From Vitrella brassicaformis CCMP3155 (taxonomy: Eukaryota; Protista; Chromerida): 64,000 nt of DNA. Below are positions 15,099 to 22,809 of the stretch, one piece after another (position 1 is the first letter of the stretch; each line of letters opens with the position of its first letter). The DNA lies in NCBI GenBank assembly GCA_001179505.1, contig CDMY01000387.1, positions 1-64,000 of the forward strand. Reading direction: 5' to 3'. A program made the translations under genes and the position numbers. The notes beneath the pieces are model-generated. The model was given only the letters and a program-made list of their open reading frames with translations, made no database searches and was not told the DNA's origin.

Positions 15099-16787
15099 CT
15101 AGCCAGTTTGCCCTGTCCTCTCCGTCTCCCTCCTCTCAACAATCATCTTGACAGCCGCATGCACGTCGTGGGACACTATGTGTGCCGGGTCATCGGGATC
15201 GTTATCCTCGCCGCTGAACACACCCGTCCTCACCAGCACTGACGTCCACGGCAGCCCGGCACGATTTGCACCTCTCACGTCGGCTCTGACGGCATTGATG
15301 AAACAGACAAACAAACCAACCATCAGGCACATCTTTGCCCGTTTAAGTGCGTGTATGCGTCGGCTGGTTGCTTTACTTGGGGTTGTCTCCGATGGCATAG
15401 ATGCGGTCGAAGGTGACATTGTCAGCGGCTGGCAGCGACCGAATGCGCCGTACCTCTGCCTCCAGGATGCGCGTGGCGTACCTGTACACCACTGCATTCG
15501 GCTTGCTGATACATATGAAACGACCCACCACGAATGAGAGCATACGTGCAGCTTGCGTCTATCTGCACCCGGCAGGCCAGCTCACCCATAGTATGTGACG
15601 GGCAGCGGCCGGCCGTGCAGCTTCTCGAATAAGTGCTCAAGCGCTGTAGTGAATGCACCCTGCCCAAACCTACCTGACACACACCAACTCATGGCATGGC
15701 GACGGATGGGGTGACTATTTGACTGGCTGGCTCGCCAGTACCTGGGCGTGTGGTGTGCCGCAGAATAGAGAAAGTCGGGGTTGGAGGCGTACAGATGAGG
15801 GCTGTGCTCCTCGCCGGCCGCCAGCGAGCCAGACAGAATGTCGCACAACACCTGTGCTTCCAGCGCCCAATCCTGGGGGTCATGCAGGATCACCACAGCC
15901 TCCGGCAGCGGCCTGAACAGACGAAAAGAGGCAAAGCCGACCGCGTCCATGCACCATCACCCGTCCGTGGCTCACCCCTTCGGTCTCGTCTCCACTTTGC
16001 GGTAGGGATAAAGGTTAGGCCACTCCTGCTTATACACACACAACCCACATGCAGCCACACTTCGGTGGCTGCTGCAGTCAGATTTCTGATCTCTTGTCCG
16101 ACCGCACCTGCAGGAAGTCCTGCGGTGTGATGATGTCGCTAAAGCCACACGATTTGGCGACGTCGAGAAAGCGCTTGGATCCCACCACCATGACCCGACG
16201 GTCTGTGTAGCGCTGCGCCACTTCCCTCATCGGCGTGTGGCTCATCTGGACCTGACCGACACCCAGACAGACACCTGCATCGATGCATCCACCCACCGAT
16301 CCTATCTGCCTCTATCTATCATACCTACCTGATCAGGCGAGACCTCTGTGTCCAGGAGTGTCGTCAGCTCCTCTGCCTTGTTGCTCTCCGTAATGCCGCC
16401 GCCGTTGGTCAAGAAGGTGAAAGGCAGGTCCCCATCTCTCAGCAGCTTCAGGGCCTCCTTGGCCCCCTGCAGCGCTTTCTTGCCTCTCACAAGCACGCCA
16501 TCGATGTCGAACTGAATGCATGCACACACACAGAACAGAATCACACTGCGCCAGATGAAGATCTGGGCGTGCCTTCACTCACCACGACAGCTGCCTTTTC
16601 TCGATGCGTCGATGGTGCGTCACGGCTTGCTGCTGTAGTGGAGAGATGCCGCCGATGCAGCGATGCGCTGCATACCAGGCCTCTCCTCACGCCTGAAGCA
16701 GGCACGAACCGAGAGAAACGCTTTCAAATTGGTTCTTTCTTTCGCCTTTGTCCTTCTCTGCTGTTGCTCACCTTGGACGCTGCGCAT
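15099..16787 (-). CDS. HDHD5: HAD-superfamily subfamily IIA hydrolase (CECR5/HDHD5-like), probably mitochondrial
   Basis: Spliced leader peptide MRSVQGVRRGLVCSASLHRRHLSTTAAS (presequence-like). Motifs FDIDGVL, FLTNGGG, ASNPDF..., GQGAF, YYGKP, IGDNPKSDVRGAN, SVLVRTGVF. Confidence 0.88.
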
Positions 16788-16952
16788 CAAAGAGCTCTCG
16801 TCTTCCTTTTCTCGCCGCCACTTGCGAGCTACGGATCGGGATATTGCAGATCTGATGAGGCAACACCTTAGTTAAGGAGCCAATGTGTAGCTGCTGCAGC
16901 CAGGGAGGTCACTGATCACAGATCTGCTTCAATCCTCTCCTGTCGTCTGGCA

Positions 16953-19900
16953 ATGAGGTCATCGATGCGGCAGTCAGTCGCACCATCGAGGAGGACCGAT
17001 GACGGCACTGCAGCAGCAAGATCCCGGCCTCTCTCAGCCTTTTCCACTCATCCACCCACTTCAACAAGGACGGCTCTTCTGTCGGTGCTGCTATTCGCCA
17101 CCTCGGCATCTGCATTCCGCCCTCTCCCCAGCCCCTCCATACGCCCTCTATCGCCGCCTCATCTGAGATCAGCATCAGCTCTCCGGGCGGCCGTGGCATC
17201 TCCCGAGCGGAAAACTGTTGTCACACAGAAGCAGCCGGCGAGCAGCCAGCCAGCTAAGGCTGAGCTGAGGAAGGCGTGTCGTCAGGTGGTCGAGCAGCAC
17301 AAGGATGGGGCTTTCTTTGAGGCCAAGGTGCGCATGGTGACGGAGTTTGGTGCGTGGTTGGATTGTGGCGCCGGCATGCCTGGGTTCCTGCACGTCCACG
17401 AGATGGCCTATGGGTTTGAGGCAGAGATGGGCGAGAAGGTGAAGCCTGGCGACACTCTCAAGGTGCGACTCATGGACGTCATCGAAACAGGTACATAAAA
17501 CCACAGAGAGAGACAGCGCCATGCACTGAGTATGATGGGTGGGTTGTTTCTCTTGTCTATCCCTGTCCGTCAAGAGTCCCGCATTTTGCTGACTATGCTG
17601 CCGTCGGCTGATCCGGAGCCGCTGCTGCAGCCACTGCTGGAGTCGGTCCCACCTGACATGTTCTTCAACGGCACTGTCGTGGCCACCACAGACTCTGGCG
17701 CCTTCATCAAACTGACCCTTCCACCACCACCACCGCTGAAGGCGGACGATGCCACTATGGCTGCTGACGCTGGACCCACGCCGCCCCCTCTCCCCGATAA
17801 GCCGATTGACATCGTTGGCTTTGCTCAGTACGGCGATCTGACCGGCTTGCAGCTGCAGCCAAAGGGAGAGCAGGGTGACAAGACTGATGACGTGATTGTG
17901 GCCATCGATGAGGCGGGGACAGCTCACAAGGGGCAGAGCGGTGGGCCGCTGAGGCTGGCTGATGTGGGAGAGGCCTATTCTGTGGGCCAGGAGGTGTCTG
18001 TGCGGGTCAAGTACGTGGAGCCGCGGCGGCGAGTGTACCTGTCGTGCTACCCTCCCATGTATGACGCCACCTTTGATCCCGTGCTGAGCGGGCAGGTGTT
18101 GCTGCAGCGGGCCAACGCCATGGGGGGCGGTGGCGGGGGTAAGGTGAAGGAGCGGCCCTTCATTATCGCGTCACCCTTCCGCAGCGACACCATGGTCATC
18201 AAGGCACCGACGGCTCTCAACCAGGCCGCCAAGCTCGACAAGGAAACCCTCGTGGGTTTCCTAAAGCTGGTCAGTCTAGTGAGTGGACACACACACACAC
18301 ACACACGCACAGGCAAAGGTGACCACCCAGATGTGTGTGTGTGGATGCAGAGGCTTCCGTACTTTTTGCAAGTCCGCTACGGCCTGACTCAGGACCCCTT
18401 TGACGTCCAGCGTTGGCCATCATACCCCACCCTCCTCTCCGCCTTCCAGCACTGGACGCACGTGCAGTCCACCGCCGCTTCCGCACTATCGAGCCCCCAG
18501 CAGCCCACAGGAGGCACGCCGACCACCATGGCGTCCATTGTGAGCCCTGCTGAGGGGGGCTCCACGGCTCCGGTGGACCTGTCTCGCGCCCGTCCTCCGT
18601 TGCCGCAGTACATGCCGTCCATCATCGTGGGCAGTGGGCGGATGGCGCAGGCGTTGCGCAAGTGGGGTCGTGAGGGTCGTTATGTCGACGAGAACTACTC
18701 GATCCACGGTGTGGATGTGACGGTGCCGATGGAGACCTACCAGGACGCGTCAAGGAAGGGCCTCCACCCCGCCAATGCGCTGCAGGCCGGACAGGGACCC
18801 ATCTACGTACGTAGACCAACCATTCAGCTAGGAAAGGGGACACACTGACAGACAGACACATTGATTGAACGCTGTGCTGTGGATAGGTCTGCGTGACTCC
18901 CGACGATGTGGAGAAGGTCATCCTCGCCACACCGCCACACAGGAGGCAAGACCTGGTCAGTCGGAATCACCTCGCTCATCCACACACACCACACCCCCCG
19001 GTATAGATCTGATTGTGTTGATGTGCCTGCCCATGTGCCAGGTGTTCACGCAGATCGGTATGATCTACCCTTTGCTGGAGAAGTACGGCCTGCAGGACGC
19101 CACGCAGTTGTTGCCGTACGTCATTCTCGGCCGACACGGAGAGATCGCACTCGACGTCACCACCGAACTCAACCCTGGTCAGACAGACATTGTGGACGTG
19201 CAGCTCACAGGAGCCGATGAATGCATTCACTTGACGTATCGACGTGTGCTGTGTGTGTCAGATGGCATCACGTTGGTGACTGGCAAGTGGGCTGAGAAGT
19301 TCTGCGAGCGCCTCAACGTCGGCGGCATGTACTGCAGGGTACCTACCTACACAGGCAGCTAGCTGTCAATGCGTCTTTCGTCCATGGGCCAATGCAATGC
19401 ATCTGTCTGTCTGTCTGCCTGCCTGTCTGCAGGTGACGGATCGCGGCGAGTACATGGAGCGGATGGTCGAGAACGTCGTCTGGCTCAGCTCAATCATACC
19501 CGTAGGCCCATCCCATCGAGAGCCATAACCCACCCATCTGGATGGATGTTGGTCTATCTCTCTGTGTTTCGTTTCGGCCCCATAGGTTGGTGTGAAGCAT
19601 GGCGGCATCACCGTCGGCGAGGTCATCGCAGAACACCAACGTATGTGTGTGAATCAAACACCCACGCAAGGCGCCTTCGCACAGCACACCTGTCGTCTGC
19701 CCGTATTGCATGTCTGATCTGCCTGCAGTGGAGGTGGAGGATCTGATGGAAGAGCTCATGGCCGGCGCCAAGACCGCTCTCAACGTCAGAAATGACGCCA
19801 GGTGGAAGGAGAGGCTATTCGACTACGCCAGGGCGGTGGCTGCGTTCCCGACGACGTTTCAAGAGTTTGAGTATCGCAATGGCTGGTTTTGGGGCATGTC

Positions 19901-21121
19901 AAGGACGGCAATCAAGAGAGGCGAGGCCGACCCGCTGCCGCAACACACCAAACTCATGCTGGTGAGTGACTTACTTACATGCCACAACCCCACTCACAAG
20001 GGCATCTCCTTCTCTCTCGCCATAAGGATTTGGGAATCCCTGAGGTCCTCAAGGAGATCGAAGCCATGGAAACGGTCAGTCAGGAAGCACCAACGCCCAC
20101 ACACACATTGACCAGACTAATCCACCCTTGCCGCTTCCCTCCCTCATTGTCTGCAGGCCGATGCCGACAGCAGCAGCGCTGTCCCCGCCACTGATGCGTC
20201 TGACGAGGAGGGGCAAATATATGAAGACGAGGGCCCTGAGGTGTGGGAGCGGCCACGAGTGGCTCCCAAGCCAGGGATCACGCCACCAGAGGAGACGAAA
20301 TACGTCGTCAGGCCCACACTTCCACCAGAGGAGCGACAGAGGAGGCGGGAGGAGGCACGGTACGCACGCAACGCACGATGGTCCTTTGGCTATTGTTGAA
20401 TCTATTCGATGCATCCTCTTTTCCATGCAGTCGCGCGGCCGCTACTGCTCGTGAGGAGGAGGAGGCTCTTCAGGCATTCTACGCCGAGCTGACGGCCGAG
20501 CTTCAAAGGCAGAGTGACGGCGATGCGAGTGAAGACGAGCTGCTGTGGAGAAAACAAGCTCTCGAACTGCTGAGAAACGCACGAATCACGACGGTAGGTA
20601 CGCAGACAGACAGAGCGGGAGAAGAGAAATGTCCACACACACGGCTCCCCCCTTCATCTATGCGCCATGCGTGTGGTGTGGCTTCCCATTCATTCATCAT
20701 CACATCAGGGCGATGACGTTGAGCTGTCGTCTCCCGGTTCTCTCCCCCGCGGCATAGCCGACGACCCCTCACGGCCGGCAGGGGATGCGCCCGGCCCCGG
20801 TAAGGGCCAGTCGCGTCCGTTGCGTGACATGGAGGTGACAGTCGAGGAGGAGAGGCGGCGGGAGGAGAGACGCGAGCTGCGGAGGGAGGTGGAGAAGGAC
20901 AAGGACATGGTCCCCACATTCAACTTCGCGCCCGCAGACTACATCTCGGAGGAACAGGTATGTATGCAGCATTGTGCATGGTCATGGGCTGACTGACCGA
21001 TGTGTCTGTGTGCGTGGGTGTGTGGGTGCAGTTGCGGTTTTGGCAGCGGCAGATGCAGGCGAGGTCTGGGATGCCGCGACCGCCGCCTGCAAAAGCAGCG
21101 GCGGCACAGCCAGACAGCTGA
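16953..21121 (+). CDS. Plastid-targeted fusion protein: signal peptide + ASA-F transit peptide, two S1 RNA-binding domains, At1g16080-like Rossmann-fold domain, acidic/coiled-coil tail
   Basis: Removing intron 16973-17068 gives MRSSMRQTALLSVLLFATSASA-FRPLPSP. S1 motifs EAKVRMVTEFGAWLDCG...GFLHVHEM...KVKPGDTLKVRLMDV and FNGTVVATTDSGAFIKL...SVGQEVSVRVKYV. Then IIVGSGRMAQAL...GPIYVC...DLVFTQIGM...NPDGITLVTGKWAE...FPTTFQEFEYRNGWFW...DPLPQHT. Confidence 0.8.
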
Positions 21122-21799
21122 GTGAGCTAGGGGGTCGGTCATATGTGCCTGAATGCCAGCACTGATCGAGGCAATGTGTCTGTATTTGTGGGATGGCGAG
21201 CTGTGCAAACGGTTTGATGGATGGACGGACCGTGGCTTTGGTACTGCGTGCGTCACTTGTGGCTGTCCAGAAATGCATGGACACGGCCGGCCGGCCATTG
21301 CGAGAGGTGCAAACCGATGAAGCTGTGCCTGGGGGATTGGTCCGACCCTCACGACACAGACAAGCATTGCAGGCATGTCAGCCAAAGGGGCGTTGTCAGC
21401 CATGAATCAGTCGGCAGCTACTTAAGTCAATCCCCGCCAGCCAGTCACACACACCTACACACACGCGCGCACGCAATTCACTGACTGCACAAACCATCGA
21501 TGTCACCAGACTGGATTGAAGCCCCTCTCTCCCTCCTCATGTCTGTATGTCTGAGTGCTAAGTCCCTCTCTGCCCCCTCCCCGTCTGTCTGTCTGTCTGT
21601 CCGCTCACAACACACTCGCCGAAGATGATATCTATGTATGCCGCCCACTGCGGTGCCCACCCCTCTCCCTCTCCCTCCCGCATCTCTGCCATGTCCGCCA
21701 TCCATTCGCCATCCCCCTTGGCTCACTGGCCCGGCCCTCCGCCTCCCTGCTGCTGCTGGCTGCCGTGTGGGTGGCCTGCCGGCGGGAACGGCAACGCAC

Positions 21800-22809
21800 T
21801 CAAAGGCAGGGCAGATTCCCCACTGGCTGCTCGTGAGGCCACCGTGGCGGCTGTGTCGTCATCGGCACCACCGCCACCTGATGTGGATGGGGCGGTGAGG
21901 CAGCCACACTGCGATGGCCAGGAGGCGGATAGACGAACGCTGCCGGTGGCGGCGAGAAGGGTGGTGGGTAGGGATGCGGATAGGGGGGTGGGTATGCGGG
22001 CAACCGGGGTGCCAACTGGGGTGTCAAGGGGGCTGGGGCGACGTGTGGCGATGAGTGAGGAGCCAAACCATGAGAGCCGACAGGCGGCCCAACCTGACGG
22101 CTCATTATATTTGGGTGTCATCATGCTGGCTCATTATATTTGGGTGTGCTGTGCTTACGGGAGGGATGGATGCGTGTGTATGAGGGAGGCGGGTGACGTG
22201 ACGGCCCACTTGACTTGATGGTCCAGGCATATCTGCGGCCACGACAGGTGGCTGGATGTCGGTGTGCGAAGCACTCTCCGCCTGCACACAGTGACAAAGA
22301 GAGGTGTTGTGAGGACAGCAAACATCCCAAACACCACCTATCTTTGGGTACTGTACCTGCCGTCGCCCTGGCCCATCCCTGCCTGCCGTGGCAGCTATGG
22401 CTTCCTCCCTCGATAGCCCCATCTCTTCCTCTGCGTGCACAGGCAAGGACATGACATGGCATTGGTATGGCGACGCACAAGCGCGGGTGACTTGCTATAT
22501 GTTGCCCACCCAGAAGGGGATTGTAGCGGGGATAGCGTCCTGTGGGCCGGCTGGGCCGTCTGCCCATGACGGAAATGAACCAACCGGTCCTCGAGAACTG
22601 CACTCCACATGGACAGCGGGCAGACATGGCTTCAGTGCTGACTGTAAGACGTCATTGCTTCCATCTGTGTCCTCTCACCAGCCGCTCGTCTTGAGACTCT
22701 CCCTCCGCTCCTGACGCACTCGCACCTGCCCCGACGGCCTCGGAAGCACTAACAGCATGAGGTCCTCCCGATACGGCAGCCCCCGCGTTCGCCGCGTCAA
22801 CCAACACAT

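What the first reader, a model, noticed from the sequence alone, without database searches (positions are those of the whole stretch)
16953..21121. Plastid-targeted fusion of tandem S1 RNA-binding domains to an At1g16080-like Rossmann-fold domain
Seen: S1 domain 2 and the start of the Rossmann-like domain (IIVGSGRMAQAL) lie in one continuous ORF (17532-18848), so the fusion does not depend on my splice model. Downstream exons give GPIYVC, DLVFTQIGM, NP(D)GITLVTGKWA and FPTTFQEFEYRNGWFW..DPLPQHT. The leader has the ASA-F stromal signature. Known (from memory): these motifs match the uncharacterised plant/algal chloroplast family of Arabidopsis At1g16080 (ketopantoate-reductase-like fold), which I recall as standalone proteins, and S1 repeats bind plastid mRNA or ribosomes. 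Inference: a previously undescribed protein coupling a dinucleotide/metabolite-binding domain to plastid RNA binding, a Rosetta-stone clue to the function of an orphan plastid family.
Basis: partly seen in the sequence, partly recalled or inferred. Interest (0 to 1): 0.82.

Follow-up and report, generated by a model that had tools for sequence, protein, structure and literature searches.

The report
Chromerid S1–S1–ketopantoate-reductase-like plastid fusion protein
This is a real, transcribed 14-exon gene of the alga Vitrella brassicaformis that joins two S1 RNA-binding domains to a diverged copy of an uncharacterised plastid protein family (Arabidopsis At1g16080, ketopantoate-reductase fold); the only other copy found is in Chromera, and it gives a limited clue to what that family does.

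Summary
Window 16953-21121 (+) holds a 14-exon, all GT-AG gene of 1026 codons. It is identical from its second Met to the public Vitrella brassicaformis CCMP3155 model CEM08807.1 / A0A0G4F7X6.

- **One mRNA, one ORF.** Two independent RNA assemblies each hold one fully spliced contig across all exons with no differences.
- **S1 domains.** Domain 1 passes Pfam S1. Domain 2 is S1-like only at profile level and carries an insertion of about 75 residues.
- **C-terminal domain.** It has no Pfam family. It is 37% identical to Arabidopsis At1g16080 and folds like ketopantoate reductase (Z 20.1 to E. coli PanE).
- **Distribution.** An exhaustive search of 1.84 billion representatives found one other S1 fusion, Chromera velia Cvel_11451. 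Other relatives have no S1 domain.

New here: the two fused copies form one long-branched clade. They have lost family-conserved residues that align with PanE's catalytic Asn98 (both species) and Lys176 (Vitrella only).

The domain is therefore more likely a dinucleotide-binding or regulatory module than an active reductase. This weakens the Rosetta-stone argument.

The fusion is deposited but undescribed in the searchable literature. Interest is moderate.

The parts
16953..21121 (+). Whole CDS, 14 exons, 1026 aa. Exons: 16953-17490, 17575-18269, 18351-18806, 18887-18955, 19042-19177, 19262-19338, 19433-19501, 19586-19640, 19729-19961, 20027-20074, 20157-20359, 20431-20593, 20709-20957, 21032-21121.
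   Evidence: All introns are GT-AG and the frame is kept. The same junctions appear in JGI transcript contig L001 and in the spliced contigs of runs X6 and X7. The model is identical to CEM08807.1 from the second Met.
16857..21658 (+). Extent of the mRNA as seen in a transcript assembly: 5' UTR of at least 96 nt, 3' UTR of about 540 nt.
   Evidence: L001 aligns to 16857-21658. X6 and X7 contigs reach 21571.
16953..17237 (+). N-terminal leader, aa 1-95. It has a 39-aa basic n-region, a hydrophobic stretch at aa 40-54 (17070-17114) ending A-S-A, Phe55 (17115-17117), then a Ser/Pro/Ala/Arg-rich transit-peptide-like stretch.
   Evidence: The Kyte-Doolittle maximum lies at aa 40-52. Residues 56-95 have 1 acidic and 7 basic residues, and 21 of 40 are S/T/A/P. 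The Chromera orthologue has a classical signal peptide followed by F. Targeting itself was not tested.
17298..17594 (+). S1 domain 1, model aa 116-186, interrupted by intron 1 (17491-17574).
   Evidence: Pfam PF00575: E 7e-8, 33.2 bits on exon 1 alone; 48.6 bits in the full protein against a cut-off of 22. NCBIfam rpsA and PNPase S1 regions also match.
17634..18056 (+). S1-like domain 2, model aa about 200-340. It carries a Vitrella-specific Pro-rich insertion of about 75 aa (about 17712-17936).
   Evidence: Pfam S1 is sub-threshold (E 0.024, C-terminal half only). hhalign of Vitrella plus Chromera domain 2 against an S1 alignment gives probability 94.8%, E 5e-8, over S1 columns 2-81. The insertion is absent from Chromera.
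18057..18611 (+). Linker, model aa 341-498, containing the in-frame 81-nt intron 2 (18270-18350). It includes a segment conserved with Chromera (..LDKETLVGFLKL.. / ..LPKELLVEYLRM..) that is predicted helical.
   Evidence: Pairwise alignment with Chromera. AF2 predicts helices at P0034 390-454 with pLDDT 57-81 in an otherwise poor model. Intron 2 is spliced out in L001, X6 and X7.
18612..20068 (+). At1g16080-family, ketopantoate-reductase-fold domain, model aa 499-790, exons 3-10. The Rossmann loop is G505-S-G507-R-M-A510. Ile591 sits at the PanE Asn98 position, Asn671 at the PanE Lys176 position and Glu744 at the PanE Glu256 position.
   Evidence: AF2 pLDDT 90.3, pTM 0.89. E. coli KPR 2ofp_A: Z 20.1, rmsd 3.4 A over 250 aa. 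37% identity, E 4e-64 to At1g16080. Residue mapping.
20069..21121 (+). Charged, low-complexity C-terminal tail (aa 791-1026, rich in E/A/R/P) and the stop codon; exons 10-14.
   Evidence: Composition. No Pfam hit. The exons are spliced in frame in the RNA contigs. The tail is nearly absent from Chromera.

Best explanation
This is a nuclear gene of Vitrella brassicaformis for a protein of about 1026 aa. The leader looks like the bipartite plastid leader of red-lineage complex plastids. Behind it come two S1 (OB-fold) single-stranded-RNA-binding domains, a partly conserved helical linker, a diverged member of the At1g16080 family (ketopantoate-reductase fold), and a charged tail.

The fusion arose once, before Vitrella and Chromera split, and has been kept in both.

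Shown: gene structure, a single spliced mRNA and ORF, the domain identities and the fold, the restriction of the architecture to chromerids, and the residue substitutions.

Inferred: the S1 pair binds plastid RNA or the ribosome. The reductase-like domain keeps its GxGxxA dinucleotide loop. It has lost the Asn aligned with PanE Asn98 in both species and, in Vitrella, the Lys aligned with the catalytic Lys176. It has also lost several other family-conserved polar residues. I therefore think it acts as an NAD(P)(H)- or metabolite-binding or regulatory module rather than as an active reductase. That would couple plastid redox or metabolite state to RNA binding, translation or RNA stability.

My confidence is about 0.9 for the architecture and about 0.35 for this mechanism.
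For: - **Gene model.** 14 GT-AG exons in one frame, identical to CEM08807.1.
- **One mRNA.** JGI transcript L001 has the same 14 exons. Runs X6 and X7, from different studies, each hold one fully spliced contig (3663 and 3560 nt, depth 74 and 205). These cover 16857/16953 to 21571 with no differences and no indels. X4 holds the unspliced genomic form.
- **S1 domains.**
- **Fold.** pLDDT 90.3. KPR family tops Foldseek at E 2e-8 and VIA at Z 16-20, above opine and glycerol-3-phosphate dehydrogenases at Z 12-14. The ESM Atlas nearest clusters are eukaryote-only and unnamed, TM 0.82, rmsd 1.7 A.
- **Family membership.** 37% identity, E 4e-64 to the 313-aa protein of L003. Residues 44-54 of that protein equal the At1g16080 mature N-terminal peptides in PMC11546460.
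- **Conservation of the fusion.** Chromera Cvel_11451 (753 aa, 39% identity) has the same domain order. The same sequence is predicted from both genome and transcriptome. The two form a clade with SH-aLRT 99 and a stem length of 1.17.
- **Degenerate site.** The family motif 'EKxxW' aligns with KPR 'W(R/Q/E)K' Lys176, 'QNG' with 'HNG' Asn98, and 'KEFEW' Glu with Glu256. Among 43 standalone relatives these positions are N 34/43, K 36/43 (plus R 5) and E 35/43. Vitrella has I, N, E and Chromera has T, K, D.
- **Other family-conserved residues lost in both.** R563, N564, P618, G621 and K739, in P0034 numbering.
Against: - No experiment shows RNA binding, dinucleotide binding or plastid location.
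- The residue mapping onto E. coli PanE rests on low-probability sequence alignments (hhalign probability 1-3% against a single sequence). These agree with the HMM alignments to two other KPR structures and with the fold match. I could not inspect the model's coordinates.
- Chromera keeps the Lys, so loss of catalysis may not be general.
- Other conserved residues (D581, Q586, D620, K636, E666, R744, N745, D762, H767) are retained. A changed rather than lost activity is therefore possible.
- The Vitrella hydrophobic stretch lies 39 residues from the start, which is unusual for a signal peptide.
- One public transcript assembly (L001) carries an extra T at about 18052 that would end the protein just after S1 domain 2. 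It also carries 10 Ns at 18568/18569. Neither is present in the X6 and X7 contigs or in genomic DNA. I read both as assembly artefacts in a stretch that the low-depth run X1 does not cover. X1 being the source of L001 is my guess, and raw reads were not available.
Confidence: 0.55

Rival explanations
1. The protein is an active bifunctional enzyme. The reductase-like domain is still an NAD(P)H-dependent oxidoreductase, with a changed substrate or alternative catalytic residues. The S1 domains only tether it to plastid RNA, nucleoids or ribosomes, as in bacterial IspH-ribosomal protein S1 fusions.
For: - The Rossmann loop and many family-conserved residues are retained, including the Glu at the PanE Glu256 position, R744, N745 and H767.
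- Chromera keeps the Lys176-equivalent.
- A reductase-S1 fusion exists as a curated bacterial family, NF000907, which is the best NCBIfam hit of S1 domain 1.
- The fused domain has been maintained in two species at 39% identity.
Against: - The Asn98-equivalent is lost in both species and the Lys176-equivalent in Vitrella. Five further near-invariant positions are changed in both.
- The clade has a long stem branch, consistent with relaxed or altered constraint.
Confidence: 0.25
2. The fusion is an artefact: two neighbouring genes (an S1 protein and an At1g16080-like protein) joined by a gene model or by read-through or overlapping transcripts.
For: - The JGI contig L001 has an extra T that would stop translation right after S1 domain 2, and an N-run before the Rossmann domain. 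JGI therefore called three separate ORFs on it: 262, 181 and 528 aa.
- A contig across two genes does not by itself prove one transcript (note).
Against: - The genome, an independent genomic contig (X4) and two independent spliced RNA contigs (X6, X7) lack the T and the Ns.
- There is no stop, no intergenic space and no second leader between the parts.
- The 154-codon linker is open (P about 0.005 by chance) and is partly conserved in Chromera.
- An in-frame intron is spliced inside the linker.
- Chromera has the same single ORF in both its transcriptome and its genome model.
Confidence: 0.03
3. The protein is not a stromal plastid protein. The N-terminal hydrophobic stretch would be a signal anchor or would target another compartment, such as the ER or secretory pathway or the periplastid space.
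For: - The Vitrella hydrophobic stretch begins only at residue 40, behind a basic 39-aa n-region.
- No targeting predictor or experiment was available.
Against: - The A-S-A|F junction is followed by a basic region poor in acidic residues and rich in S, P and A.
- The Chromera orthologue has a classical N-terminal signal peptide followed by F.
- At1g16080 is a plastid protein with a mapped mature N-terminus.
- Family members occur across plastid-bearing lineages only.
Confidence: 0.1

Closest known systems
Arabidopsis At1g16080 family (uncharacterised plastid protein, about 313 aa; UniProt C0Z2K9; orthologues sometimes auto-named 'Nuclear protein' or 'ketopantoate reductase')
   Same: - The C-terminal domain aligns end to end at 37% identity, E 4e-64.
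- It shares the motifs GxGR, GPIYVC, DLVF.Q.G, NP.G.T..GKW, FPT...EFE.RNG.F and DP.P.HT.
- The nearest ESM Atlas structures are streptophyte members of this family, TM 0.82.
   Different: - Here the domain is fused behind two S1 domains and a linker and carries a 236-aa charged tail.
- It has a 24-residue insertion after the first Rossmann helix.
- It has lost family-conserved R563, N564, N587, P618, G621, K667 and K739 (P0034 numbering).
Chromera velia Cvel_11451 (A0A0G4I6Y4, 753 aa)
   Same: - It has the same domain order: leader with F, two S1-like domains, the conserved linker segment, then the reductase-like domain.
- It is the sister of the Vitrella domain in the tree, SH-aLRT 99.
   Different: - It has no insertion in S1 domain 2 and almost no C-terminal tail.
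- Neither of its S1 domains reaches Pfam.
- It keeps the Lys176-equivalent.
Ketopantoate reductase PanE/ApbA (PF02558 + PF08546; E. coli PanE, PDB 2ofp/1yjq)
   Same: - It has the same two-domain fold: Z 20.1, rmsd 3.4 A over 250 of 293 residues.
- It has a GxGxxG/A loop.
- The standalone family conserves residues aligned with Asn98, Lys176 and Glu256.
   Different: - Identity is only 12-16%.
- No Pfam ApbA or ApbA_C hit is obtained for the Vitrella protein.
- In Vitrella the Asn98 position is Ile and the Lys176 position is Asn.
Bifunctional IspH (LytB)/30S ribosomal protein S1 of bacteria (NCBIfam NF000907)
   Same: A reductase-type module and S1 RNA-binding repeats lie in one polypeptide. 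It is the best NCBIfam hit of S1 domain 1.
   Different: - The enzyme is unrelated (an Fe-S IspH) and the domain order is the opposite.
- It has four S1 repeats and is bacterial.
- Only the S1 part is homologous.
Chloroplast RNA-binding proteins with S1 domains (PRPS1, RLSB, SDP, PNPase, RNase E) and Rossmann-fold RNA binders such as CSP41 (from established knowledge, not tested here)
   Same: They are plastid proteins that use S1 OB-folds, or a degenerate dinucleotide-binding fold, to act on plastid RNA.
   Different: None combines S1 domains with a ketopantoate-reductase-fold domain. No specific orthology of the Vitrella S1 domains to any of them was found: generic S1 hits reach only 25-33% identity.

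Membership tests
S1 RNA-binding domain (Pfam PF00575) | Profile match above the curated gathering score, domain 1 | tested here: met
   33.2 bits on exon 1 alone and 48.6 bits in the full protein, against a cut-off of 22.
S1 RNA-binding domain (Pfam PF00575) | Profile match, domain 2 | tested here: inconclusive
   Pfam gives 15.5 bits, E 0.024, for the C-terminal half only. hhalign against an S1 alignment gives probability 94.8%, E 5e-8, over nearly the whole domain once the Vitrella insertion is gapped.
S1 RNA-binding domain (Pfam PF00575) | Five-stranded OB-fold barrel | tested here: inconclusive
   The AF2 model of the N-terminal half is poor (pLDDT 39, two-sequence alignment). The strand-strand-strand-helix-strand-strand pattern at residues 118-183 fits an OB fold, but confidence is too low to search with.
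S1 RNA-binding domain (Pfam PF00575) | Binds single-stranded RNA | not testable with these tools
   This needs EMSA or CLIP.
At1g16080 family (orphan plastid KPR-like proteins) | Full-length domain homology to At1g16080 | tested here: met
   37% identity over 281 aa, E 4e-64. The reference sequence L003:60-998 was identified as At1g16080 by its published N-terminal peptides at positions 44/45.
At1g16080 family (orphan plastid KPR-like proteins) | Family signature residues (CTRN, QNG, EKxxW, KEFEWRNG, DPxPxHT) | tested here: inconclusive
   RNG, DPxPxHT, GKW and the E of EK are kept. CTRN has become CVTP, QNG has become QIG, EK has become EN and KEFEW has become QEFEY.
At1g16080 family (orphan plastid KPR-like proteins) | Places inside the family tree | tested here: met
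   It groups with Chromera (SH-aLRT 99) inside the family, on a long stem. Deeper placement is unresolved.
At1g16080 family (orphan plastid KPR-like proteins) | Plastid location | not testable with these tools
   The leader is consistent with plastid targeting. At1g16080 itself is plastid-located in PMC11546460.
Ketopantoate reductase PanE/ApbA | Two-domain KPR fold (Rossmann N-domain plus helical C-domain) | tested here: met
   Z 20.1 to 2ofp_A. KPR entries fill ranks 1-28. Foldseek E 2e-8.
Ketopantoate reductase PanE/ApbA | Pfam ApbA (PF02558) or ApbA_C (PF08546) above threshold | tested here: not met
   There is no hit for the Vitrella protein even at E 10. Relatives reach only sub-threshold ApbA_C, for example P0042 at E 0.0097 and 16.7 bits against a cut-off of 22.7.
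Ketopantoate reductase PanE/ApbA | Catalytic Asn98, Lys176 and Glu256 (E. coli numbering; roles recalled from established knowledge of PanE) | tested here: not met
   The aligned positions are Ile591, Asn671 and Glu744 in the model. Two of the three are lost.
Ketopantoate reductase PanE/ApbA | GxGxxG dinucleotide loop | tested here: met
   The loop reads G-S-G-R-M-A (GxGxxA) at model aa 505-510 and aligns with PanE G7-G12.

The most novel reading that the evidence does not exclude
The Rosetta-stone reading holds for the whole family. Under it, At1g16080-type proteins are found here in land plants, green and red algae, Paulinella, cryptophytes, chlorarachniophytes, stramenopiles and chromerids. 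They would be NAD(P)(H)-binding factors that act on or with plastid RNA or ribosomes, linking redox or metabolite state to plastid gene expression. The chromerid protein would simply have made that partnership covalent.
Probability: 0.12. Interest if true: 0.8.

Novelty: new variant of a known kind. Interest (0 to 1): 0.45.

Why it matters
At1g16080-type proteins occur in every plastid-bearing lineage sampled here. None was found in prokaryotes by the motif scan. They have no Pfam family, and none of the papers that mention At1g16080 (three of nine read) gives a function. A natural fusion to S1 RNA-binding domains, kept in two chromerid species, gives a concrete and testable idea: a link to plastid RNA or ribosomes.

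This work adds three things. It shows that the family keeps the ketopantoate-reductase catalytic positions, so it is probably a real reductase. It shows that the fused chromerid copies have lost some of those positions, so they may be pseudo-enzymes. And it shows that a different fusion, to a CbbY-like HAD hydrolase, exists elsewhere and points to metabolism instead.

The clue is therefore useful but not decisive. The architecture is confined to a small lineage.

Tried and rejected
- **Word-index protein searches.** The 438-aa ORF returned only a JGI fragment of the same gene. The Rossmann part found five standalone relatives. Restricted to long candidates, the search found only two Closterium models. 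In these a RelA/SpoT protein is joined to the family domain across what looks like a transit peptide, so I read them as merged gene models.
- **Family scans.** Pfam and NCBIfam give nothing for the C-terminal domain.
- **N-terminal half structure.** The AF2 model built from a two-sequence alignment was too poor to use (pLDDT 39).
- **Linker.** The ESM Atlas feature search gave no usable hit.
- **Prokaryotic relatives.** The pattern scan of 185,579 prokaryotic genomes matched 11 stretches, none of them a relative. This is not proof of absence, because the patterns were family-specific.
- **Standalone paralogue in Vitrella.** The metagenome scan kept 80 of 266 relatives and none came from the Vitrella transcriptome sample, so the question stays open.
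- **Literature.** No paper mentions Cvel_11451, A0A0G4F7X6, A0A0G4I6Y4 or CEM08807, and none combines S1 domain, chloroplast and ketopantoate reductase. Of the nine papers that mention At1g16080 I read three; each only lists it.
- **Non-coding RNA.** Rfam finds nothing in 15500-22500.
- **Rejected: the extra T and the N-run in L001 as evidence for two proteins**.
- **Rejected: P0110** (family domain split by an ion-transport domain), as a chimeric gene model.
- **Earlier notes.** The scan's earlier notes hold nothing on this locus.


Full report
**Observation**

The region lies in about 60% G+C eukaryotic DNA. Reading the sequence and checking splice sites by script gives a 14-exon gene on the + strand, 16953-21121. 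Every intron is GT..AG and the frame is kept throughout, giving 1026 codons.

- Its first 14 codons are intron 1.
- It contains an in-frame 81-nt intron (18270-18350, with a CA repeat).
- It runs into intron 3.

The open frame is far beyond chance. P is about 3e-7 for 438 codons and about 0.005 for the 154-codon linker alone.

**Identity of the gene**

A word-index search returned a 528-aa JGI protein, P0001, identical to the C-terminal half of my model. Its 90% cluster also holds P0034, which is CEM08807.1 / UniRef A0A0G4F7X6, 'S1 motif domain-containing protein' of Vitrella brassicaformis CCMP3155, 1022 aa. P0034 equals my model from the second Met, with no mismatch. The window is therefore Vitrella, and the fused model is already public.

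**Transcript evidence**

P0001 lies on a 3725-nt JGI transcript contig, L001. L001 aligns to window 16857-21658 with exactly my 14 exons.

L001 has two peculiarities:
- An extra T at about 18052, just after S1 domain 2, which would stop translation at once.
- Ten Ns at 18568/18569, with no genome bases missing there.

These explain why JGI's gene caller split the contig into three ORFs.

Laying public runs on the stretch resolved this:
- X6 and X7 come from different studies. Each holds one fully spliced contig (3663 and 3560 nt, depth 74 and 205) covering 16857/16953 to 21571. There are no differing letters and no indels.
- X4 holds the unspliced genomic form, also without differences.
- X1 has low depth and no cover at all over 17662-18305.

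I therefore read the T and the Ns as assembly artefacts. These runs are contigs, not raw reads, so transcript ends and minor variants cannot be judged.

**N-terminal part**

Residues 40-54 are the most hydrophobic stretch of the first 110. They end A-S-A and are followed by Phe55. A basic region poor in acidic residues and rich in Ser, Pro and Ala follows. From established knowledge, this is the pattern of bipartite leaders of red-lineage complex plastids.

The 39-residue n-region in front of the hydrophobic stretch is unusual. The Chromera orthologue has a classical signal peptide followed by F.

S1 domain 1 (aa 116-186) passes Pfam S1, at 33.2 bits alone and 48.6 bits in context against a cut-off of 22. 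It also matches the S1 regions of rpsA and PNPase models.

Domain 2 (aa about 200-340) is sub-threshold in Pfam, because a Pro-rich insertion of about 75 residues splits it. A profile of the Vitrella and Chromera domains matches an S1 alignment with probability 94.8%, E 5e-8.

The AF2 model of this half is poor (pLDDT 39). It does show an OB-like strand pattern, and helices in the conserved part of the linker.

**C-terminal domain**

No Pfam or NCBIfam family matches it, nor its relatives. With a 45-sequence alignment, AF2 gives pLDDT 90.3 and pTM 0.89.

Fold comparisons:
- Foldseek puts ketopantoate reductases first, at E 2e-8.
- VIA-align gives Z 20.1, rmsd 3.4 A over 250 residues, to the E. 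coli PanE ternary complex. KPR-family entries (ketopantoate reductases and D-mandelate dehydrogenases) score Z 16-20. Opine and glycerol-3-phosphate dehydrogenases score 12-14.
- In the ESM Atlas the nearest clusters are unnamed and eukaryote-only (Streptophyta), TM 0.82 and rmsd 1.7 A. Bacterial ApbA families follow.

**Is it the At1g16080 family?**

Three metatranscriptome contigs from the family scan (L003, L004, L006) encode a 313-aa protein. Its residues 44-54 read exactly as the two mature N-terminal peptides reported for AT1G16080.1 at positions 44 and 45 in PMC11546460. The Vitrella domain is 37% identical to it over 281 residues, E 4e-64.

The three papers I read of the nine that mention At1g16080 only list it as an unknown plastid protein.

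**Distribution of the family and of the fusion**

I ran an exhaustive HMMER search of 1.84 billion representatives with residues 90-800 of P0034. It gave 44 hits below 1e-30. The family hits are short standalone proteins, apart from the cases below. Named members come from these lineages:

| Lineage | Named member |
|---|---|
| Land plants | Lupinus |
| Streptophyte algae | Netrium, Mesotaenium, Closterium |
| Chlorophytes | Chloropicon |
| Red algae | Compsopogon |
| Paulinella | Paulinella chromatophora |
| Cryptophytes | Guillardia |
| Chlorarachniophytes | Lotharella |
| Stramenopiles | Aureococcus |

A motif scan of prokaryotic genomes found none.

The only other protein combining S1-like domains with this domain is Chromera velia Cvel_11451 (753 aa, 39% identity). 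It has the same domain order, and the same sequence is predicted from both its genome and its transcriptome.

In a maximum-likelihood tree the two chromerid domains are sisters (SH-aLRT 99) on a long stem of 1.17. This indicates one fusion event in their common ancestor, followed by fast change.

**Active-site positions**

The alignments map three family motifs onto PanE:
- Family profile against two KPR structures: 'EKxxW' aligns with the KPR 'W-x-K' motif that holds Lys176.
- hhalign against E. coli PanE (fetched) gives the same Lys equivalence. It also aligns the Glu of 'KEFEW' with Glu256.
- A global hhalign aligns 'QNG' with 'HNG', which holds Asn98, and GxGRxG with G7-G12.

The hhalign probabilities are low because the target was a single sequence. 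The three alignments agree with each other and with the fold match.

Residues at these positions:

| PanE position | 43 standalone relatives | Vitrella | Chromera |
|---|---|---|---|
| Asn98 | N in 34 | I | T |
| Lys176 | K in 36, R in 5 | N | K |
| Glu256 | E in 35, D in 4 | E | D |

Both chromerid proteins also replace the family's R563, N564, P618, G621 and K739. They keep the GxGR loop, D581, Q586, D620, K636, E666, R744, N745, D762 and H767 (P0034 numbering).

My reading is that the standalone family is probably a genuine NAD(P)H-dependent reductase. The fused chromerid copies have an altered, possibly inactive, site while still being able to bind a dinucleotide.

**Mechanism and rivals**

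The best-supported account is a plastid-targeted RNA-binding protein. Its S1 pair would bind plastid RNA or ribosomes, and its degenerate reductase-like domain would serve as a ligand-binding or regulatory module.

- Shown: the architecture, its expression, its conservation in Chromera and the substitutions.
- Inferred: RNA binding, ligand binding, location and any coupling between them.

Rivals:
- An active enzyme tethered to RNA. This is plausible, since Chromera keeps the Lys.
- A non-plastid location.
- An artefactual fusion, which is largely refuted.

**Comparison and novelty**

The closest relatives are the At1g16080 family (member, but atypical) and Chromera Cvel_11451 (orthologue).

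The protein shares the fold of PanE/ApbA reductases. It fails their profile thresholds and two of their three catalytic positions, so I do not file it as a ketopantoate reductase.

The general idea of a reductase joined to S1 repeats has a bacterial precedent, IspH-S1 (NF000907), but the enzyme there is unrelated.

The protein is in public databases, and no paper on it was found. I rate it a new variant of a known kind and of moderate interest. It gives a testable hypothesis for a widespread orphan plastid family.

Three things limit the clue:
- The fused copies are divergent.
- The architecture is confined to two species.
- A different fusion of the family, to a CbbY-like HAD hydrolase, points elsewhere.

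Noticed in passing
L001:1113 and L001:1549-1558 (window about 18052 and 18568/18569): The JGI transcript contig of this gene carries a one-base insertion and a 10-N scaffolding join. IMG's prokaryote-style gene caller therefore deposited three separate 'proteins' (262, 181 and 528 aa) for one eukaryotic ORF. The 528-aa fragment is the representative of the 90% cluster and hides the full-length protein from length-filtered searches.
   Followed up: yes
P0049 (530 aa) and its cluster of 9 members on more than 16 environmental contigs: In an unidentified alga the complete At1g16080-like domain is fused directly to a CbbY-like HAD hydrolase (Pfam Hydrolase E 1e-18), with no transit-peptide-like spacer. 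This is a second natural fusion of the family, and it points to metabolism rather than RNA.
   Followed up: partly
P0036 and P0037 (Closterium sp. Yama58-4, 1383 and 1650 aa): These gene models join a RelA/SpoT (RSH) protein to an At1g16080-like domain. A transit-peptide-like stretch and a Met lie between the two parts, so they look like merged neighbouring genes rather than a true fusion.
   Followed up: partly
P0110 (909 aa): The family domain is split in two by an ion-transport (PF00520) region. This is probably a chimeric gene model.
   Followed up: no
window 16302-16544, minus strand: An exon-like ORF upstream on the opposite strand has a HAD-hydrolase-type motif (..FDIDGVL.. and ..TNGGG..). 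It is probably part of a divergently oriented neighbouring gene. I did not scan it.
   Followed up: no
window 18284-18310 (intron 2): A (CA)n microsatellite lies inside the in-frame 81-nt intron. The reads tool skipped 18277-18323 as a repeat.
   Followed up: no
P0059/P0079 clade (Guillardia theta, Hanusia phi and relatives): A second lineage of the family has independently lost the QNG Asn (the motif reads GSG) and replaced the Lys176-equivalent by Arg. Loss of these positions is therefore not unique to the chromerid fusions.
   Followed up: partly
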